In this document: positions 54,871-64,000 of the stretch, in pieces
Position numbering within the stretch: the stretch's first letter is position 1
Layout of the letters: each line of letters starts with the position of its first letter
Assembly (NCBI GenBank): GCA_044892525.1
Contig: CM097886.1
Coordinates: 30,070,001 to 30,134,000 of the forward strand
Direction: 5' to 3'
Source: Schmidtea polychroa
Taxonomy: Eukaryota
DNA: 64,000 nucleotides
Program-made: the position numbers and the translations under genes
Notes under the pieces: generated by a model
The model's database searches: none
What the model was told of the DNA's origin: nothing
Seen by the model: the letters and a program-made list of their open reading frames with translations, nothing else

Positions 54871-56570
54871 CTATTAATTAGTGATTACGCAAATTATACT
54901 ATTTAAAAAATTATACAATAATGTTAACAAATAACAAATTTTAATATGGACTCATCATGTATTCTAACTGAATATATTCAATATTCCGAGATCTTTTTGG
55001 CAAATGCGTAAAAAATTAACAATAATTGGTTATAAACCCCTCCCTGTCAGAATATAACAATTTATGGTGGTCAGATGTTGAAATTCTTTTTTAATCTATA
55101 ATTTATTTATCCTTCCAGACTAATTTTCATTAACGCTTTGCTTTTTAACGCACTTTTGACTCAAAATATTGCTGGTTATATAAGCATTTGGATCGCAGAG
55201 GTTCTCACTGACAATATATTCAAAATTATTTAACTGTTATATCATTTTTTCTTAGTGTAGTTCATAGATTGAGCATATCTGACGATACTGTTGGGTTTTG
55301 TCTGAATCTATAGAAGTCAATACAACTGAGAAGGTAATTTTTCTTCAAATTTTAGGCCACTGTGGTAAGTTCTAACTGGCATTCAGGAAAATAGCCTTCT
55401 AATTCAAAATTTCTATTTTCTTTATGATTAAAGAATTTTTATTAGTACTTTTCTTGTCATTCTCTTGTCAATTTCTTGTCATTTTCTTTGTCTTTCATTT
55501 TAGTGATCAACAATAACGTTCTATCTAGCCAATGTTTATTTCCCTAAATAGTTTAGTAATCCTGTTAATTATTTTTATTTTATTTTTACAAATACAGGGA
55601 GTTTGATAATTGCACTTAAAATAACAATTAAATAAAACTATTGTATGAACGTTAAGACCAAAATAAAATATATTCATGAGAAAATCTGATAATTCCATTA
55701 GGTGAGCTTCGAACACTGATAACACCGAAATATGTAAACAACAGAGAGAGTAATGTTGCTGAAATGATACGTCCGATGAGAAATCGATACCAAATTTTCC
55801 ACATATTGTTACAAATCCAGAGTTTTGAATTCATGTTAAAAAAGGTGGTGATGTTCAGAAAAATATTAAATTGAACCAGTGTGTGTGTTTTTATTTATAT
55901 AGGAACCATCGGGTTGAGATTCTGAGAATATCAACACCAATAATCCCATTGACTTCTTTTATAATATTCCTTTTGAAATAATTTTATGTAAAAAGTAAAT
56001 TTTAACAAAAACAAACAAAATCACATATTTAATATTTTTTAAAAATCCAATACATCTTTGAAAATTTAAAACAAGTGAAATTTTATATTAAAAATGGAAC
56101 GATTGTTAACCGTAAAATGCATATATTTGGTATGATGTTTTCCAACTTTATCTATCAAAATAAAGGATAATTTATCTCATTAATATCCTAAATGTAATCA
56201 TCAAATATTTTCCCAACATAGTCGATAGGGCACCACAAATAACTGATCCTTTTAATACAAATTGGAATGCTTTCGCTATCTTGTGAACCTTGTTGAACGA
56301 CTATCTTAAAATGAATGTGCAATAAGAGAAACACTGATTTAATACATAAAATAATATAAAAAGTTTTAGTTACAATAATATCTAATTTTACATTGATGAT
56401 GACCAAACAATACAATATTAGTAGCATTCTCATTTAATGTGACTTAGAAAATTAATAATGTTTCAATTTAATATATAATTATGTTAATTTTATATTTGAA
56501 TTAACAATAATTTTGTTTTGCAGAGATAAAAAAAATTAATCAAAATTTTAATTTAATATTTAATAGTTAA

Positions 56571-56836
56571 TCTCTCTCTATATAAAAAAGCTAAGGGTCC
56601 CCTCCATCCGAATTTTACCTTTTTTTAATTTTTTTATGAAGTATTTAATCTTTTGTACTTATCGTTCTATATTACTTAGAAACGGTTTATGCTATTATCT
56701 TTTATCATAGTTATGTAAACATATTAATAAACTGAATCTTACTCCTGTCCAAGAATACCTTGGATATTAACTTTAACATTAACCTCACGTTCTAACGGGG
56801 TTGGTGAAGCGGAGCGAACAGGGGCAAAGCCCCTAT
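56571..56836 (+). mobile_element. Short non-autonomous Helitron-like element
   Basis: A|TC...TATATAAAA start; 3' GCGGAGCGAAC, hairpin GGGGC-AAA-GCCCC and CTAT|T end (CTAG expected); no TSD. Confidence 0.5.
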
Positions 56837-57001
56837 TATATAAAATAAACATAAACACTAATATGTACAAAGACATTTCCCGGTTTTACTTGAAAATGAG
56901 CCACGAGTCTACATAAAACAAAGAGTTTTTTTTATTTTAAAAGCCAGAGTTTTAAATTTAGAGACAACATAATAAAAAATAAAAATACAATTACAATTTC
57001 A

Positions 57002-57362
57002 AGGTCACGCTAAAATATGAAAAACCCTACACATATAAAAAATCTTATGATAATTTACATCAATGATTATAAACCTTTTTAATAGTTACTAAACCTCATT
57101 TTATTTTTGGGTCCAAGTCCTTCATTGTTTATATTTTTTTATAAAATATGTATTTATTTATAACTCTATTAAAACCAAAATTCATTTAACTGTAAAAGAA
57201 ATAAATACACAGATGTAAAAAAGAATTTGAAATATATATATGAAGGACTTGGACACAAAAATAAAATGAGGTTTAGTAACTATTAAAAAGGTTTATAATC
57301 ATAGATCTAAATTATCATAAAATTTCCTATGTGTGTAGGGTTTTCATATTTTAATGTGACCT
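57002..57362. repeat. MITE-like foldback with about 120-bp inverted arms
   Basis: 57002-57125 is a near reverse complement of 57240-57362. Confidence 0.8.
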
Positions 57363-57983
57363 CTTATTTTTTTATGAAATCTTAAAAATTAATTTAGTTC
57401 TAAAATACAAATACAATGTTGAAAAAAATTACATTTAAAAATTAAATAATTATATGTAATTTTAATTATATTTAGCTATAACTGTCATGATAATTCGTTA
57501 TTTATGATTATATTATTATTACTTTGATTATAGTTATTAATTAAAACAGATTTAGTTTGTTTATTATTTAATTAGTGTTTTTTCTGATTAACATTTTTTC
57601 AACTTAATGTGAAATATTTCAATTTATGTACTCAAACATTAATTTTTTTTAATAATTTCAGACGTATTAATAGAATTTTATATATGAGTAATTTATTTGA
57701 AAGTTATGTAAGTCCATTTTTTAATATGACAAAATATTTAAACATTTGCGTTTTAATAAATGGACTAATGTTAATAAACTCTAGCAACCGACGTTTGTTT
57801 TTAAAGTTAAATATTATGTAAATTTATTATTCAATCATGTTTAGTAAAGATGCATGAGAAAGATAAAACGTTTTAAAACTACCAATTGTCACCATTTAGA
57901 AATATAACGACTTGTTTTAATATATCGAATAATTTTTATTCAATAGATTAATTTTTAATAATAAGTTTTTAATAAAAAAGCAC

Positions 57984-58213
57984 CTCTCCTTTTCTCAATT
58001 TGAAGGTATTCCCATCATCATCATTTAAGGAAATATCGCGAACTATTTTCCACACTGAATCACCATAATGAATCTTTTGAACATAAGCTGCTGGGAAATA
58101 TCCTATACGTCCATTACATCTTCCTGTCCACCAGTCTGGGTCTGATGAGTTGAGCACATTTACTTTCCAACCAGCTCTTAAATAAATTATAATAATTTAA
58201 AATTATTATAATT

Positions 58214-58287
<74 letters not shown>

Positions 58288-59157
58288 GTATAAAATGATG
58301 ATTGCTTGGTAGCAGCATTTATTATTTAAAACAATAAAATGATAATTTAAGCCTTTTGCTGCAAATAATGTATTTAATGAAAGAATGTTCGACTATACGA
58401 TAGTCCTTGTCAATGACTATCGTATAGTCGAAAATTCTTTCATTAAATACATTATTTGCAGCAAAAGGCTTANNNNNNNNNNNNNNNNNNNNNNNNNNNN
58501 NNNNNNNNNNNNNNNNNNNNNNNNNNNNNNNNNNNNNNNNNNNNNNNNNNNNNNNNNNNNNNNNNNNNNNNNNNNNNNNNNNNNNNNNNNNNNNNNNNNN
58601 NNNNNNNNNNNNNNGATAGTTTAAGCCTTTTGCTGAGAAGTATATATAATCAATAAAATGAAAGAATTTTCAACTAGATAAATAGTTCTTTTCAATTTCC
58701 TGAAATTAGGTACTTCAATTTTCGAATGCTTTTTAATCTTCTTTTTTAATTTCATTTTCTTTATTCTCATTGGATAAAATTAAAATAAATCAAAGTAAAA
58801 CTTTGAAGAATTTAAAATTTTTTTAAATAAGATTTCTTATAAAATTAATAATGAAACAATAAAAGAGATTTTTAAGTTTCTAAAGCTTTTATAACTAGCT
58901 CATAAAATTTTCCTTTAATAAATAGTATCATAAAATATGTATAAAAAAGGTTCTAATAACTATTTATATACGCTATTTAAAAAAATTTTAAACATATTTA
59001 TATTTTGATTTTTTAACTAATAATCTCTAAAAGTTTACTTCCTTAAAATTTGTTTAATTTTTTTGATATTATTTTTAAATTACTATTTTTTAAAAGAAAA
59101 TATTCTCAAGGTCTATAAGAACTAATCAGCTAGCACAAAGAAATCAACACTTTATAC

Positions 59158-59236
<79 letters not shown>

Positions 59237-59595
59237 TCACGTAATTTACTTTAAATCAAGTTCATCTGATCTTCTTGCATAAAAGTCATAAAGTACAACA
59301 TAAGAATTCGTAGACAATCTTTTGTGATCGATCTAAGTAACCATTAAAACAATAAATTAAACAGTAAGAAATACTGGGTTGTTGTCGAATTCAGGATCAT
59401 ATCGACAAGGATTGTGCCTGGCATGATGACTTGAAATAAGTGATTCTGGAGAAATTGGGTTATGAAAATTGGGTCTTGGTGCTCTTTTAGCTGAATGAAG
59501 ATTTGAATGTGAGCTCCGATTATCATAGCCTGGTGAATCTGAGGATTTGTAATAATTTGATCTCTCCCTTATTGGTGAAGACGTGTGACTATTTC
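57984..59595 (-). CDS. STAC: Three internal exons of a STAC-family (tandem SH3) gene
   Basis: Exons 59595-59375, 59332-59250 and 58176-57984 splice in phase (42-nt and 1073-nt GT-AG introns) to give ...YVVLYDFYARRSDELDLKAGWKVNVLNSSDPDWWTGRCNGRIGYFPAAYVQKIHYGDSVWKIV..., like STAC DWWKG..G..GFFPANFVQRVRPGENVW. Other exons not found. Confidence 0.8.
58215..58286. repeat. (ATA)24 microsatellite
   Basis: Counted directly; 38 nt from the intron acceptor of the STAC-like gene. Confidence 0.95.
58300..58472. repeat. Second copy of the palindromic foldback element seen at 23515
   Basis: Same arm sequence (GATAATTTAAGCCTTTTGCTGCAAATAATG...), different centre, again beside (AAT)n and a gap. Confidence 0.85.
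59158..59235. repeat. (TAT)26 microsatellite
   Basis: Counted directly; 14 nt from the intron donor of the STAC-like gene. Confidence 0.95.
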
Positions 59596-59936
59596 CTAAT
59601 GAAAATAAATAGTCAGACCTATTCCTATTACACTAATATTAATATTTCATAAATGTCTTTTAAATATCAACTATTCATTTTTACTTTATATTTTATTGTA
59701 ATTTTATTATATTATGATTGTTTTGTTTTTCCGAACTTATTCGAGATTCGAGAATTTCAAAAAAAATAATTCTTCTCCCAAAATTCGAGATTCACTTTCA
59801 CAAATATCTCGAGATTATAATGACAAATTTAGTTCTACAAAAATCAGTATTAAAACCGAAAAATGAAGTGAAAAAATATTTAGGAAAATGATAACGATTC
59901 AATATTCAATAAAATATATTTTCAAATGACTTTTTT

Positions 59937-60170
59937 TCATTTATTGAAATAACTTTTTAATACATAGAAATTGCCAACTGATTGGTCCGATAATCGTGTT
60001 TTATATTTGGAGACAAAAATTCCAGAAATATAGAAATTCCTCTCATTTTGCGTTGATAGTGCATTTTTCAACATTTCTAAATTTTCTGTTGGTTTTCCTG
60101 ATGCTTCATAAACATTTATGTCCTTAAATAAGGAACGAAAGTCAGCGTTAATTGCTTCTGTATGTGTCAC
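59937..60170 (-). pseudogene. Degenerate hAT transposase C-terminus
   Basis: LEMLKNALS...ER.F.ISG.FVSK.KTRLSD.S...VLKSYF, similar to the 50044-50259 fragment. Confidence 0.6.
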
Positions 60171-60209
60171 GCTTTCTCAAATCAGTTCCTCTAATTGTAT
60201 GAATTAGAA

Positions 60210-60384
60210 CAATAACAAGTCCAGGATACCCTTAGATTTTCGGGGCCACAAACACGCATATAAATAATCGAGTAATTTTTATAGACACTGATTTGTAATT
60301 ATTTCACATGAATAAGGAATTCGTAGTAAGCGCGTCACTATCTTGCGTTGATTACCTCCCTATCCTTTGTACACACCGCCTGTC
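60210..60384 (+). pseudogene. Decayed 18S rRNA fragment with internal deletion
   Basis: CAATAACAAGTCCAGGATACCCTTAGATTTTCGGGGCCAC and TTGTAATTATT...GGAATTCGTAGTAAGCGC...TTGCGTTGATTACCTCCCTATCCTTTGTACACACCGCCTGTC match conserved 3'-major-domain SSU rRNA blocks. Confidence 0.88.
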
Positions 60385-62355
60385 TTTTCTAAATTTTTTT
60401 GAAGATTTGAATGACGATCGTTGGAATCTGAATTAAGATCTTCGTTTAATATTTGTTCCATTTCCGCGACTGAGATTGTCATAAACAAATAAGTGATTAT
60501 AATTAATATTGGTCCAAAACATTTGTTTGGTCTTCCTGTTTCAAACTTGAAATGCGAACTGATTTTTATATTAGTTGAAATTCGAACACTGATAACACAG
60601 AAATATATGAAGAACAAAGAAATTGATGTTGATGCAATTATAAATTGGATGTTGAGGTGAAGAGGTATGATATTCCATAAATTGGTACAAAAACAGATTT
60701 TTGAAAACATTTTTAATTTTAATTTTAATAATTTTTAAAACTTAATAAAATTAAATGTTCATGTTTCAGGCACACAATTAATATTATAATTTTTATTAAA
60801 AATTAATAATTAATTACATAAATTTTGTACATAAAAGTTACTTTAAAGTACATTAAATTACAATGTAAAATGATCTTAAACTTCAAATTAATTCTAGGCA
60901 TGTAGTGTGTGTCAATCCAATACGATTGCATTTCAATGCAACGTACGGGGTTCTTGTGTGTTGCTGAGGTTTGTATTGGTTTTCTTATATTTTAATTTGA
61001 AGTGAATAGAATTTATTTTGTTCTTTGAAACTGGAATTTTTATCGATTAAGTTATTTAATAAAATTTGTTGAAACCTGATGAATTAGAAAATAAATGCTT
61101 ATTTATGTTATATTCAAAAAATTCATTTAGTGAATGGAAGTTGCCAACTCCATCTTTACATATCTTTTCTAAAATTGTTCAAAAGTTACCAAAAATCGGA
61201 TTTGAAGGAGATCATAAATTCTATACAATTAATTTATTAACTAATCTCTACACCAATATATTAGTACTAATAAAATTCAATTTTTATTATATATTTTATA
61301 TATAATTATTTAAGAAATATAATTAACAATAATAATGTTTAATTTTTAGTTTCTCAAAGGGAAAATAATTAATTTAATTTGGTCAAAAATTACTTTCAGT
61401 ATCATCTGCCAAAGAGACTTTCTCGAAATTCAGTTAGTCTGTTTTAATAATTTTGCATAATTACTTGTCAGATTATTTTGAAATATTTCATTTTTAATCG
61501 TAAAAATATTATATGCAAAGATTTTAAATTAATTTTTAAATATTTTTTTTAATTTATGGGATTTTATTCCACATCTTGAGGTCCAGTTTCAAACAGATTC
61601 TATGCTCAAAGTTGAAGTAATTATTCTATAAAATTTGAAAAATATTTTATATATTTTATATTTCTTTTGATATCTTATTATAATTACTTAATAATATTGA
61701 TAATAGATTATGTTATGTGTTCTGATACGAGAGCTATATTGGGTTCAATTAATTTTTCTATTTTAAAATTTTTTTATTTATTAGAAATTCAAACAAAAAT
61801 AATTATTCTAGGTCTTATTAAAACAAATTTTATAATTTTAACTTTAACCCATTTTCACAGTCTTCCAATATCAGAACAAGTGAATTTTTCTATCCCCATT
61901 TCAAAATGAGCTATATATTTATATTTTTAGGTTTATCACCCTATTACTTATATTTTAAACAAACTTGACTGAATATGTTTATTTCTCTTCTAGTATTGTG
62001 ACTTGAATAAAATTAATTTGAAATTGTGAATAGTAAGTTGTAATTTTTTCTATAATATTTAGTCTTGATTGTTAGATTACTGTTATTATTTATTGTATAT
62101 TATCATCAGTTATTTTGTTATTTATGTAATAAAAAGTTCCTTTTTTTGAAACTCCGATAAAATATGAGTATTGAATTAAAATAATTTTGTCGATTTTATA
62201 CAGCACCAGGATTGTTGGAATTGGTGGAAGATGAGAAGTTCTGGTATGATATTGTAAGCATAGACATGTTTATAACTCTTCCTGAAAAAGACAGATGAAG
62301 AGGAAGACACTTTACTCTCTGAGCTTCGAAAGCAGATGACTAGACATAGGGTAAT

Positions 62356-62770
62356 TTGGAACATAGTTTTTTACTATTTAAGTCTCTTAAAAGCCCCAAA
62401 AACATATCATTTGACCCCGTTGTAGGTTTTGAATTGTTTTTTGATGATGAGATTTATGAACTTTTAAAGAATATTTCAACGTATGCAAAATATAAAGGAG
62501 ATCATAATTTTGATAGGAGTATAAAAGATGATTATAAAATGTTAATCTGCGATTTTATTATTGTCTGACTATTTGGATATATACAGGTCGAGAATGTTAT
62601 GAGAATGTGAAACAGAAACTTATAATTCGTTGGTTTCTACCTAATCGTTACGAGAAAATAAAAAATATACAAATTATAGTGACAATAACAATCTTGTGGA
62701 AAATGATACATTTGCCAAGATTAAACCTTTATTTAATTTACTAAATATTGTTATATGAAATATGCTGACT
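62356..62770 (+). pseudogene. piggyBac (PGBD2/3-like) transposase remnant
   Basis: FELFFDDEIYELL...YAKYKG and NRYEKI...DN.....DTFAKIKPLFNLLN motifs across broken frames. Confidence 0.65.
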
Positions 62771-64000
62771 TGTAGTGAGATTGTACTGAGATTGTTGATG
62801 AACTCGCATTTGGGCATGTAGACACCAGTATCGTACGATGTGAAAGTATTGGAAATTTTATCTGGAATAACGTTTTTCATTGACTCCTTTTGGCAATCGA
62901 AGACGGATGGATCAGCCAGGCTCTCGTAACCAACTTTATCATGAGAATCACTAGAAACGCGATTTAGTATTCTAAGGAAAATTTAGTTGGTTTAATAGAA
63001 GATGTTGATGATCAAGCTCATCAACAGAGAGATCGCAGCTAGGAAAACAAAGGTTTCAGCTTCTCGAATGTTTGGCATATTTTTTATTGATTTTGATGAG
63101 ATTTAACATTTGAGATTTCGAATGATGCATGAATTGTTTTTATATCGTTTTTGAATGAAAAGAATATTTAAACAATAGTTTTAATTTAATTTATCTATTA
63201 ATATATTTTAAGTTTAATTATTAAGTTTATATTTTTATTAATGTGGGAATCAGAGGCACTACACCTATATAATAAATTATTATTTGCAAATTTATTTCTA
63301 TTTCCATTTAAAATTTTGTAAATGCCCAGTGTTCCGAAATTGTAACATGCTAAAAACATAATTTTGCACTTTTTTCATAAAAATAAAAAAATAATTTTAT
63401 TTTCGATGTGAAAAAAAATAATTTATTAAATACTGTTAATTGATTTTATGATATAAATTTTAATAAATTATTTTATTTTCTTTTAATTAATTTATCATAA
63501 TTTAATCTTTTAAATGTAATTTTAATTCAAAAATAATTTTCAAGTACTAACGAAAAAAAATTAATTAATTGTTTTTAAAGTGTCCATGAGAAGAAGAAGA
63601 ATTCCAGGTTCGAGAACTTTTCTAGATCATCAAATTCATGATTTGCTCAAGTGATGCCTCAGCTGTCAGATGGATAAATCTTTGAGTCACATTCAACTGG
63701 AATCTGATCATTTTGATTTATCATTTATTTTATTGGCTAACATATTTATTTAAATAAAAAAGAAATATATAATTATTATTTCTTTTTCAAAAATTTAGAT
63801 AATAATTAATTTTTTGATTATAACAGAGAAACAGAAAAACCACAAAATAAATTTACAAATTAAAAAAAGTTGTGAAAATTATTTGAATGACATTCAATGA
63901 CTTTTTGACATAATAAGAATAATTAAATTAATTTTAACCTATTACTTTTGCATATTGTTTTAACATTATTTCTGTAAAATCCCTGTTATTGGCAGGGAAA

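What the first reader, a model, noticed from the sequence alone, without database searches (positions are those of the whole stretch)
58177..59249. Long intron bracketed by complementary triplet repeats that would fold it back to host-typical size
In the STAC-like pre-mRNA, (AUA)26 begins 14 nt after the donor and (UAU)24 ends 38 nt before the acceptor. Pairing (about 72 bp) would loop out about 0.9 kb of foldback and repeat DNA and leave about 52 unpaired nt, close to the 42-48 nt of the other introns seen here. Complementary dinucleotide repeats bridging introns are known in fish; an AAT/ATT version that lets a short-intron genome tolerate insertions would be new to me. Caveat: AAT tracts are common in this window.
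Basis: partly seen in the sequence, partly recalled or inferred. Interest (0 to 1): 0.75.

Follow-up and report, generated by a model that had tools for sequence, protein, structure and literature searches.

The report
Retroelement-filled intron flanked by AAT/ATT repeats
A 1.07-kb intron in a planarian SH3 (STAC-like) gene really is bracketed by complementary (AAT)n/(ATT)n repeats and is spliced precisely, but the repeats are most likely the flanks of Penelope-like retroelement pieces that landed in a microsatellite inside a once-short intron, not a new splicing device.

Summary
On the minus strand, intron 58177-59249 has (AAU)26 starting at its 14th nt. (AUU)24 ends 38 nt before the acceptor. 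The arms are 72 nt 100% complementary. RNA-derived contigs from two studies join 59250 to 58176 exactly, and the joined peptide is a complete SH3 domain.

- **Interior:** it is built from Penelope-like retroelement (PLE) pieces: a young head-to-head palindrome of 3' ends and an old 5'-truncated 3' region.
- **Tails:** each piece carries the 29-nt PLE "tail" directly against one arm.
- **Family habit:** in this genome (Schmidtea polychroa by matching assembly figures) the family habitually sits inside AAT microsatellites. Perfect arrays of 60 nt or more occur about 5 per 100 kb.
- **Position:** arms near the splice sites follow from insertion into a microsatellite in a roughly 51-nt intron.
- **Same transcript:** two other long introns (1,679 and 7,459 nt) lack complementary ends and are spliced.
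- **Local sample:** nearby AAT-class pairs are mostly direct, not inverted.
- **Donors:** consensus donors are not enriched for a following (AAT)n.

The predicted 88-bp helix may still form and loop the insert out, but that is untested. The inverted orientation of the two arms is unexplained. The masked stretch 58473-58614 was not read.

The parts
59250..59332 (-). Upstream exon (83 nt) encoding the first half of the SH3 domain (...YVVLYDFYARRSDELDLK)
   Evidence: RNA contig pieces X1 record 1 and X3 record 8; translation; Pfam SH3_1
59237..59249 (-). First 13 nt of the intron with donor GTAAAT; the 5' residue of the presumed ancestral short intron
   Evidence: Sequence; exact joint 59250 to 58176
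59158..59236 (-). 5' arm: (AAU)26.3 in the pre-mRNA, (TAT)26.3 on the + strand
   Evidence: TRF, 100% matches; pairs with the 3' arm in the MFE fold
59129..59157 (-). 29-nt PLE 'tail' of the old subfamily, inverted relative to the left tail. It joins the 5'-truncation point of the old PLE fragment.
   Evidence: 22/29 identical to the left tail in fixed register; 10 of 200,000 random 29-mer pairs do as well. Similar to tails in L015 and L016. The junction at 59129/59130 is unique among 40 scored copies.
58615..59128 (-). 5'-truncated 3' region of a Penelope-like retroelement, old family, in sense orientation with the host gene. Its 3' terminus runs into the masked stretch.
   Evidence: 2,307 candidates in the genome; 40 scored at 76-83% identity over query 1-515. 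In other copies the sequence continues into an RT ORF (RVT_1, E 6.8e-10) and a weak GIY-YIG match (E 0.055) on the same strand.
58473..58614 (.). Masked or unread stretch (N). Not read, not filled.
58327..58472. Head-to-head palindrome of two PLE 3' termini (young family). Arms 58348-58409 and 58411-58472 are 97% complementary. The right arm runs into the masked stretch.
   Evidence: I18, D3, D5; at least 83 genomic matches at up to 98% identity; family structure
58288..58326 (+). PLE 'tail' of the young subfamily (GTATAAAATGATGATTGCTTGGTAGCAGC plus a short ATT-rich linker), directly abutting the 3' arm
   Evidence: The same piece occurs at either end of family copies, as described for PLE tails (PMC8557442).
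58215..58287 (-). 3' arm: (AUU)24.3 in the pre-mRNA, (ATA)24.3 on the + strand
   Evidence: TRF, 100% matches; MFE fold
58177..58214 (-). Last 38 nt of the intron (AT-rich, degenerate AAT-like) ending in acceptor TTTAAG; the 3' residue of the presumed ancestral short intron
57984..58176 (-). Downstream exon (193 nt): second half of SH3-1, a short linker and the start of SH3-2
   Evidence: RNA contig pieces. The best solved relative is the STAC2 tandem SH3 (6b26_A, E 1.5e-10). STAC chains are the only listed hits whose match runs past query residue 40, to 48-56.

Best explanation
An ordinary short intron, about 51 nt plus an AAT-rich tract, splits the first SH3 domain of a STAC-like gene. It was expanded to about 1.07 kb by insertions of Penelope-like retroelement (PLE) fragments.

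These elements are 5'-truncated, form head-to-head copies, carry a 30-40-bp tail at either end, and in this genome land preferentially in (AAT)n.(ATT)n microsatellites. The two triplet arms are the microsatellite flanks that abut the two outward-facing tails. They lie close to the splice sites because the target was inside a short intron.

The old fragment (about 80% identity to its relatives) and the young palindrome (96-98%) point to at least two events.

In the pre-mRNA the arms plus tails can form an 88-bp helix that loops out the insert. This is a by-product. It may be neutral or mildly helpful, but it is not needed for splicing long introns in this animal.

Shown: repeat anatomy, junction use, repeat-family membership, RT in relatives, predicted fold.
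Inferred: ancestral short intron, order of events, by-product status.
For: - Junction and SH3 continuity.
- The interior belongs to two related repeat families. The palindrome arms are homologous to the old family's terminus (D3 and D5).
- Relatives of the old family continue into an RVT_1 ORF (E 6.8e-10) and a GIY-YIG-like stretch.
- Family copies sit inside AAT-class arrays, with the element in either orientation.
- The tail occurs at either end of copies.
- The truncation junction is unique to this locus.
- All of these match published PLE traits: 5' truncation, inverted adjacent copies, 30-40-bp tail, microsatellite bias, assembly trouble (PMC8557442).
- Neighbouring long introns have no complementary ends and are spliced.
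- Arrays of 60 nt or more are abundant.
- Planarian introns are reported to have expanded partly through transposon insertions (PMC11410931).
Against: - Single insertions of this family have same-strand microsatellite on both sides: 9 direct against 3 inverted pairs in the family loci. The inverted arms here are therefore not the default outcome, and their origin is unresolved.
- Both arms are long, uninterrupted and of similar length, which is also what selection for pairing would give.
- GIY-YIG is below Pfam's cut-off, and no hammerhead motif was found.
- The middle of the insert is masked and was not read.
Confidence: 0.75

Rival explanations
1. Selected intron bridge: the AAU/AUU helix is maintained because it brings the 5' splice site and branch/3' site to within a short-intron distance. 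A spliceosome tuned to introns of about 45 nt could then remove a TE-swollen intron. This would be a triplet analogue of the fish (AC)m-(GT)n introns.
For: - Arms lie 13 and 38 nt from the splice sites and are 72 nt 100% complementary.
- The MFE fold pairs them (88 bp) and leaves 58 nt outside. Each arm alone is unstructured, and the arm duplex is -75 kcal/mol.
- The intron is removed precisely.
- The neighbouring intron is 42 nt.
- The principle is proven in zebrafish (PMC4691745) and in yeast (PMC2536676).
Against: - The 1,679-nt and 7,459-nt introns of the same transcript have ends no more complementary than shuffles and are spliced.
- The arms are accounted for as PLE/microsatellite flanks.
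- The local sample has 7 direct and 2 inverted adjacent pairs, one of the two being this one.
- AGGTAAGT donors are followed by (AAT)6 at 5 places (reversed-pattern control 10 matches) and by (ATT)6 at 13 places.
- There is no functional assay.
Confidence: 0.15
2. One-step origin: the whole insert, arms included, arose in a single compound PLE integration or inverted duplication that copied tail plus microsatellite in both orientations.
For: - PLEs often integrate with an adjacent inverted 5'-truncated copy, which gives inverted repeats around the unit (PMC8557442).
- Both ends show the same order of microsatellite, tail, element, facing inward.
Against: - The two tails are only 22/29 identical.
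- The left part is 96-98% identical to its family and the right part 76-83%, which implies different ages.
- The tail-microsatellite orientation is not fixed across copies, being roughly half AAT-type and half ATT-type.
Confidence: 0.07
3. Pure coincidence: two unrelated microsatellites happen to lie in inverted orientation in a long intron, with no link to the repeats between them.
For: Arrays of 60 nt or more are abundant. Hundreds of inverted pairs within 1 kb are expected by chance (my estimate from those counts).
Against: Each arm abuts a PLE tail base-to-base, and the family is systematically embedded in such arrays.
Confidence: 0.03

Closest known systems
Compound insertions of Penelope-like retroelements in microsatellites (Craig, Yushenova, Rodriguez & Arkhipova 2021, PMC8557442)
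   Same: 5'-truncated copy, head-to-head inverted copies, a tail of about 30 bp at either end, embedding in a simple repeat, an assembly problem at the site, and RT (plus a weak GIY-YIG match) in longer relatives.
   Different: The target here is (AAT)n rather than the (TA)n, (CA)n or (C)n named in that paper. The flanks are inverted instead of direct. The clade within PLEs was not determined, and no hammerhead motif was detected in this fragment.
(AC)m-(GT)n intron-bridging repeats of teleost fish (Lin et al. 2016, PMC4691745)
   Same: Complementary simple repeats within about 40 nt of the 5' and 3' splice sites. The predicted hairpin dominates the intron fold and brings the splice sites together.
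   Different: - The fish class is defined by genome-wide co-enrichment (10% of zebrafish genes), minigene dependence and U2AF2 independence. None of these is shown here, and the small tests made here do not show enrichment.
- The repeats here are triplets made of A-U pairs only.
- They flank retroelement pieces.
- The loop is about 0.9 kb, against introns of about 170 nt in the fish exemplar.
Yeast intron structures that shorten the 5' splice site to branchpoint distance (RPS17B; Rogic et al. 2008, PMC2536676)
   Same: Pairing inside a long intron reduces the effective distance between splice signals.
   Different: The yeast helices are short, unique sequences with experimental support. Here there is an 88-bp repeat-derived helix with no experimental test.
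Palindromic truncated Penelope insertions in introns of this same genome (earlier scan note s1-214389)
   Same: Two short head-to-head copies of a PLE 3' end inside a host intron close to a confirmed acceptor.
   Different: That case has no flanking complementary microsatellites. It is an AI note that I checked only by analogy.

Membership tests
Penelope-like retroelement (PLE) insertion | Reverse transcriptase encoded by longer relatives, contiguous with the fragment | tested here: met
   In L018 the flank continues into an ORF matching RVT_1 at 39.4 bits (cut-off 29.6), E 6.8e-10, on the strand that makes 58615-59128 the element's 3' region. The PLE-specific RT clade was not tested.
Penelope-like retroelement (PLE) insertion | GIY-YIG endonuclease C-terminal to the RT | tested here: inconclusive
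   The L022 ORF ...VVYCITC...IYIGS... matches PF01541 at 14.2 bits, E 0.055, below the cut-off of 22.6. The copies are decayed.
Penelope-like retroelement (PLE) insertion | 5' truncation at a locus-specific point | tested here: met
   All 39 other scored copies stop matching at query 35-40, nearly all at 38-40 (window about 59127-59129). None shares the body/tail junction.
Penelope-like retroelement (PLE) insertion | Adjacent inverted (head-to-head) copies | tested here: met
   Arms 58348-58409 and 58411-58472 are 97% complementary with 1 nt between them (I18). They are homologous to the old family's terminus (D3 and D5).
Penelope-like retroelement (PLE) insertion | [quoted passage not shown] | tested here: met
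   The 29-nt piece GTATAAARTG... (about 39 nt with its linker) is found on one side or the other of family copies, and here at both outer ends. Trait as described in PMC8557442.
Penelope-like retroelement (PLE) insertion | Insertion bias for microsatellites | tested here: met
   Nearly all sampled copies of both families abut AAT-class arrays.
Penelope-like retroelement (PLE) insertion | Hammerhead ribozyme motif (canonical clades only; not universal) | tested here: inconclusive
   No Rfam hammerhead at E <= 1 in 57900-59700. Minimal variants may escape, and the fragment may lack that region.
Intron-bridging complementary simple repeats (fish AC/GT class) | Complementary simple repeats close to the 5' and 3' splice sites of one intron | tested here: met
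   13 nt and 38 nt from the splice sites.
Intron-bridging complementary simple repeats (fish AC/GT class) | Repeats pair and dominate the predicted intron fold | tested here: met
   MFE -288.5 kcal/mol with 88 long-range pairs from 59229:58215 to 59140:58305; arm duplex -75 kcal/mol.
Intron-bridging complementary simple repeats (fish AC/GT class) | Genome-wide co-enrichment of the two repeats across introns, above independent expectation | tested here: inconclusive
   Only small proxies were possible: 7 direct against 2 inverted adjacent pairs in 264 kb, and no excess of (AAT)6 after AGGTAAGT.
Intron-bridging complementary simple repeats (fish AC/GT class) | Repeats required for accurate splice-site pairing; U2AF2 independence | not testable with these tools
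   Needs minigene and in vitro splicing assays.
MITE / foldback DNA transposon | Terminal inverted repeats with target-site duplication and a DNA-transposase relative | tested here: not met
   The inverted ends are PLE tails. Longer relatives encode RT, not a transposase. No target-site duplication can be discerned inside the microsatellite.

The most novel reading that the evidence does not exclude
In Schmidtea, inverted AAT/ATT microsatellite pairs left by retroelement insertions into short introns are retained by selection because the A-U helix restores a short effective intron length. This would be a triplet-repeat, TE-seeded counterpart of the fish AC/GT intron bridge, and it could explain how a genome with introns of about 45 nt tolerates massive TE invasion of introns.
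Probability: 0.07. Interest if true: 0.7.

Novelty: new member of a known kind. Interest (0 to 1): 0.22.

Why it matters
As it stands, this is a clean worked example of how a planarian short intron grows. Penelope-like retroelement pieces land in an intronic microsatellite, and the swollen intron is still removed exactly.

It also warns that complementary repeats at intron ends can be a footprint of insertion rather than a splicing signal. In this genome AAT arrays are so dense that such pairs are expected in the hundreds.

If the bridging helix were shown to matter, it would extend structure-assisted splice-site pairing from fish dinucleotide repeats to an invertebrate, and tie it to transposon tolerance.

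Tried and rejected
- **DNA-transposon (MITE/foldback) reading.** This was my first idea after seeing the inverted inner flanks. I dropped it when longer relatives proved to encode RT.
- **A mobile non-autonomous unit carrying both arms.** Rejected: the body/tail junction is unique to this locus.
- **Microsatellite as a fixed-strand 3' tail made by the element.** Rejected: AAT-type and ATT-type flanks occur about equally next to the same end.
- **Intron created by the insertion (introner-like).** Rejected: the 13 + 38 nt outside the arms are non-coding and carry both splice sites. The 20-nt imperfect direct repeat 58158-58177 / 59244-59263 (75%, D9) is most likely chance.
- **Rfam.** Only sub-threshold miRNA-hairpin matches on the palindrome, best 58.8 bits against a gathering score of 95. 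I treat these as generic long-hairpin resemblance.
- **C1 domain.** A regex scan upstream found nothing, so 'STAC-like' rests on the tandem SH3 match alone.

Full report
**1. What is there**

The window is 30.6% G+C. It lies at C2:30,070,001-30,134,000 of a 781,270,316-bp genome in 1,012 contigs. C2 is 189,691,935 bp long. Those figures match assembly schPol2 of the planarian Schmidtea polychroa in Table 1 of PMC11410931: 781,290,622 bp, 1,013 contigs, N50 189,691,935. That is my identification of the organism.

Tandem Repeats Finder reports (ATA)24.3 at 58215-58287 and (TAT)26.3 at 59158-59236, both without a mismatch. The arms 58215-58286 and 59158-59229 are 72 nt and 100% complementary (I8).

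**2. The intron and its use**

The gene reads on the minus strand. The peptide ...YVVLYDFYARRSDELDLK ends at 59250 before GTAAAT. AGWKVNVLNSSDPDWWTGRCNGRIGYFPAAYVQKI... starts at 58176 after TTTAAG. The joined peptide covers Pfam SH3_1 from position 1 to 48 of 48, with E 4.4e-15.

Contigs of public runs laid on 57000-59700 settle the junction:
- X1 record 1 (2,691 nt) lies on 59375-59597, 59250-59332 and 57984-58176 at consecutive record positions.
- X3 record 8 (301 nt) shows the same two joints.
- The runs belong to two studies.

So intron 58177-59249 and the 42-nt intron 59333-59374 are both removed exactly. Because these are contigs, they say nothing about efficiency or retention.

The exon 57984-58176 finds the STAC2 tandem SH3 structure as its best solved relative (6b26_A, E 1.5e-10). 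STAC chains are the only listed hits whose match runs past query residue 40, to 48-56. 'STAC-like' is therefore reasonable. I did not find the C1 domain.

**3. The masked stretch**

Positions 58473-58614 lie wholly inside the intron, so the reading frame does not depend on them. No listed DNA contig bridges the stretch. The X4 'joints' from about 58355-58365 to about 58642-58655 join homologous positions of two related repeat ends, and several carry foreign letters between the two sides (tables 5 and 5c). They are best read as contigs of other copies. Continuity and the true intron length therefore remain unknown. I did not read the masked letters (see Tried and rejected for an incidental disclosure).

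**4. What fills the intron**

- **58288-58472** has at least 83 matches in the genome at up to 98% identity.
- **58615-59157** has 2,307 first-look candidates. The 40 scored lie at 76-83% identity and all end near query position 515, which is window 59129.

In oriented copies the older family continues into sequence whose opposite strand encodes a reverse transcriptase (RVT_1, 39.4 bits, E 6.8e-10). It also encodes a GIY-YIG-like stretch (E 0.055, below the cut-off). So 58615-59128 is the 3' region of a Penelope-like retroelement (PLE). It is 5'-truncated at 59129 and lies in the same sense as the host gene.

The young unit is a head-to-head palindrome of that element's 3' terminus. Its arms are 58348-58409 and 58411-58472, 97% complementary (I18). 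Homology to the old family is seen, D3 and D5.

Next to each triplet arm lies a 29-nt piece:
- left: GTATAAAATGATGATTGCTTGGTAGCAGC;
- right, in reverse complement: GTATAAAGTGTTGATTTCTTTGTGCTAGC.

They share 22 of 29 positions in fixed register. Only 10 of 200,000 random 29-mer pairs from the window do as well. In other copies this piece sits at one end or the other.

These traits are those described for PLE insertions: 5' truncation, adjacent inverted copies, a 30-40-bp 'tail' at either end, a strong bias for microsatellites, and trouble for assemblers (PMC8557442). Earlier notes of this scan on the same genome report the same kind of palindromic truncated PLE insertions in introns.

**5. The link between element and microsatellite**

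Almost every sampled copy of either family abuts an AAT-class array.
- For the young unit the two flanks are on the same strand: (AAT)34...(AAT)22 in L008, and likewise in L003, L006, L009 and L010.
- The element itself can face either way.

This fits insertion into pre-existing arrays rather than a repeat made by the element.

The body/tail junction at 59129/59130 is unique among 40 scored copies. The right-hand end is therefore the product of one local insertion event, not a mobile unit that carries both arms.

**6. Why the arms sit at the splice sites**

Outside the arms only 13 + 38 = 51 nt of intron remain. They hold the donor and acceptor and are non-coding. This is what is left if the elements landed in an AAT-rich tract of a short intron like its 42-nt neighbour. 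Closeness to the splice sites thus follows from the origin and needs no selection. This step is inferred.

**7. Does it fold?**

With the N positions left unpaired, the minimum-free-energy fold of 59279-58147 (-288.5 kcal/mol) contains 88 long-range pairs, from 59229:58215 to 59140:58305. That is the arms plus the tails.
- Twenty nt after the donor G and the last 38 nt lie outside the helix.
- The arm duplex alone is -75 kcal/mol.
- Each arm alone is unstructured.
- The 200-nt intron ends pair at -106.9 kcal/mol, against -30.2 +/- 5.1 for shuffles.

**8. Is it needed, or part of a class?**

The same transcript has two other long introns.
- **56305-57983** (1,679 nt): its next exon was located through the contigs' loose end.
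- **59596-67054** (7,459 nt, counting on beyond the window's end).

Their ends pair no better than shuffles: -32.6 against -33.5 +/- 4.6, and -21.6 against -27.8 +/- 4.2. The 1,679-nt intron has only an internal 105-nt inverted repeat. Both introns are spliced. Long introns here therefore do not require a bridge.

Perfect (AAT)20 has 467,205 + 470,401 overlapping matches genome-wide. In 264 kb around the finding there are 13 arrays of 60 nt or more. From that density I estimate tens of thousands of arrays, and hundreds of inverted pairs within 1 kb by chance. This is my own arithmetic.

In the same 264 kb, adjacent arrays of 24 nt or more lying 100-3000 nt apart are 7 direct and 2 inverted, one of the two being this pair. 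In the family loci the split is 9 direct to 3 inverted.

Consensus donors (AGGTAAGT) followed within 9 nt by (AAT)6 give 7 matches at 5 places, and the reversed-pattern control gives 10. With (ATT)6 there are 21 matches at 13 places, with a control of 8. That is the opposite of what a 5'-(AAU)n class predicts.

These are small proxies.

**9. What remains unexplained**

The default outcome of an insertion into one array is same-strand flanks, but here the flanks are inverted. The two halves differ in age (96-98% against 76-83% identity to their relatives). The tails are only 22/29 alike. A single inverted duplication is therefore unlikely. Strand flips within arrays do occur elsewhere, for example (AAT)21-AGTT-(ATT)5 in L023. 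The centre of the insert is masked. I leave the origin of the inversion open.

**10. Verdict**

The best-supported reading is a short intron swollen by Penelope-like retroelement pieces that targeted its microsatellite, with the complementary arms as a footprint of that history (confidence 0.75). A helix that loops out the insert is predicted and may help this one intron. Nothing found here shows that it is required, selected or part of a class.

The closest functional analogue is the fish (AC)m-(GT)n bridge (PMC4691745). Its defining genome-wide enrichment and experimental dependence are not shown here.

Noticed in passing
window 57021-57125 and 57240-57344: A 105-nt inverted repeat, 93% complementary and 114 nt apart, lies in the middle of the neighbouring 1,679-nt intron. 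It looks like another hairpin-forming repeat insertion.
   Followed up: no
window 59434 and 59471: RNA-derived contigs differ from the genome in the coding exon: A>C at 59434 (X1, X3) and G>T at 59471 (X1, X2, X3). These are probably strain polymorphisms.
   Followed up: no
window 58158-58177 and 59244-59263: An imperfect 20-nt direct repeat (75%, with AAAGTAAAT exact on the gene strand) spans the donor and recurs in the first 19 nt of the downstream exon. It is probably chance in AT-rich sequence, though it sits where a target duplication of an intron-creating insertion would be.
   Followed up: partly
window 58350-58470: The PLE palindrome gives sub-threshold matches to several miRNA-precursor models (best mir-3912, 58.8 bits against gathering 95). 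This is generic long-hairpin resemblance. The family has dozens of copies or more, so it is a possible small-RNA source.
   Followed up: no
G000:C4:43010821-43968973: Six copies of the old PLE family, five with identical scores and one within 1 bit, lie roughly 120-440 kb apart. This suggests a large tandem segmental duplication on chromosome 4.
   Followed up: no
G000:C4:80895348-80896106: Three palindromic PLE-end units lie about 270-310 bp apart. The unit plus its microsatellite also occurs as a short tandem array.
   Followed up: no
L020 (G000:C3:106918328-106921845), flank beyond the PLE 3' region: A 159-aa ORF with a G+C-rich, coiled-coil-like composition (...RELESTWFSPEDMKKKVAQVLQLQTQAAQDQMEIRALKLQLRALETERNEQ...). 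It is not among the four longest ORFs listed for the near-duplicate locus L018 and is out of character for this AT-rich genome.
   Followed up: no
window 58473-58614 versus loci L001 and L013: The stretch written N in the window is returned with letters when the same place is fetched from G000. It is therefore a mask rather than an assembly gap. I did not read the letters.
   Followed up: no
window 59596-64000 and beyond (to C2:30137054): The intron upstream of the SH3-linker exon is 7,459 nt (GTGAGT...TTAG). Three of the four introns seen in this gene are long, so 'host-typical 42-48 nt' describes only one mode of intron size here.
   Followed up: partly
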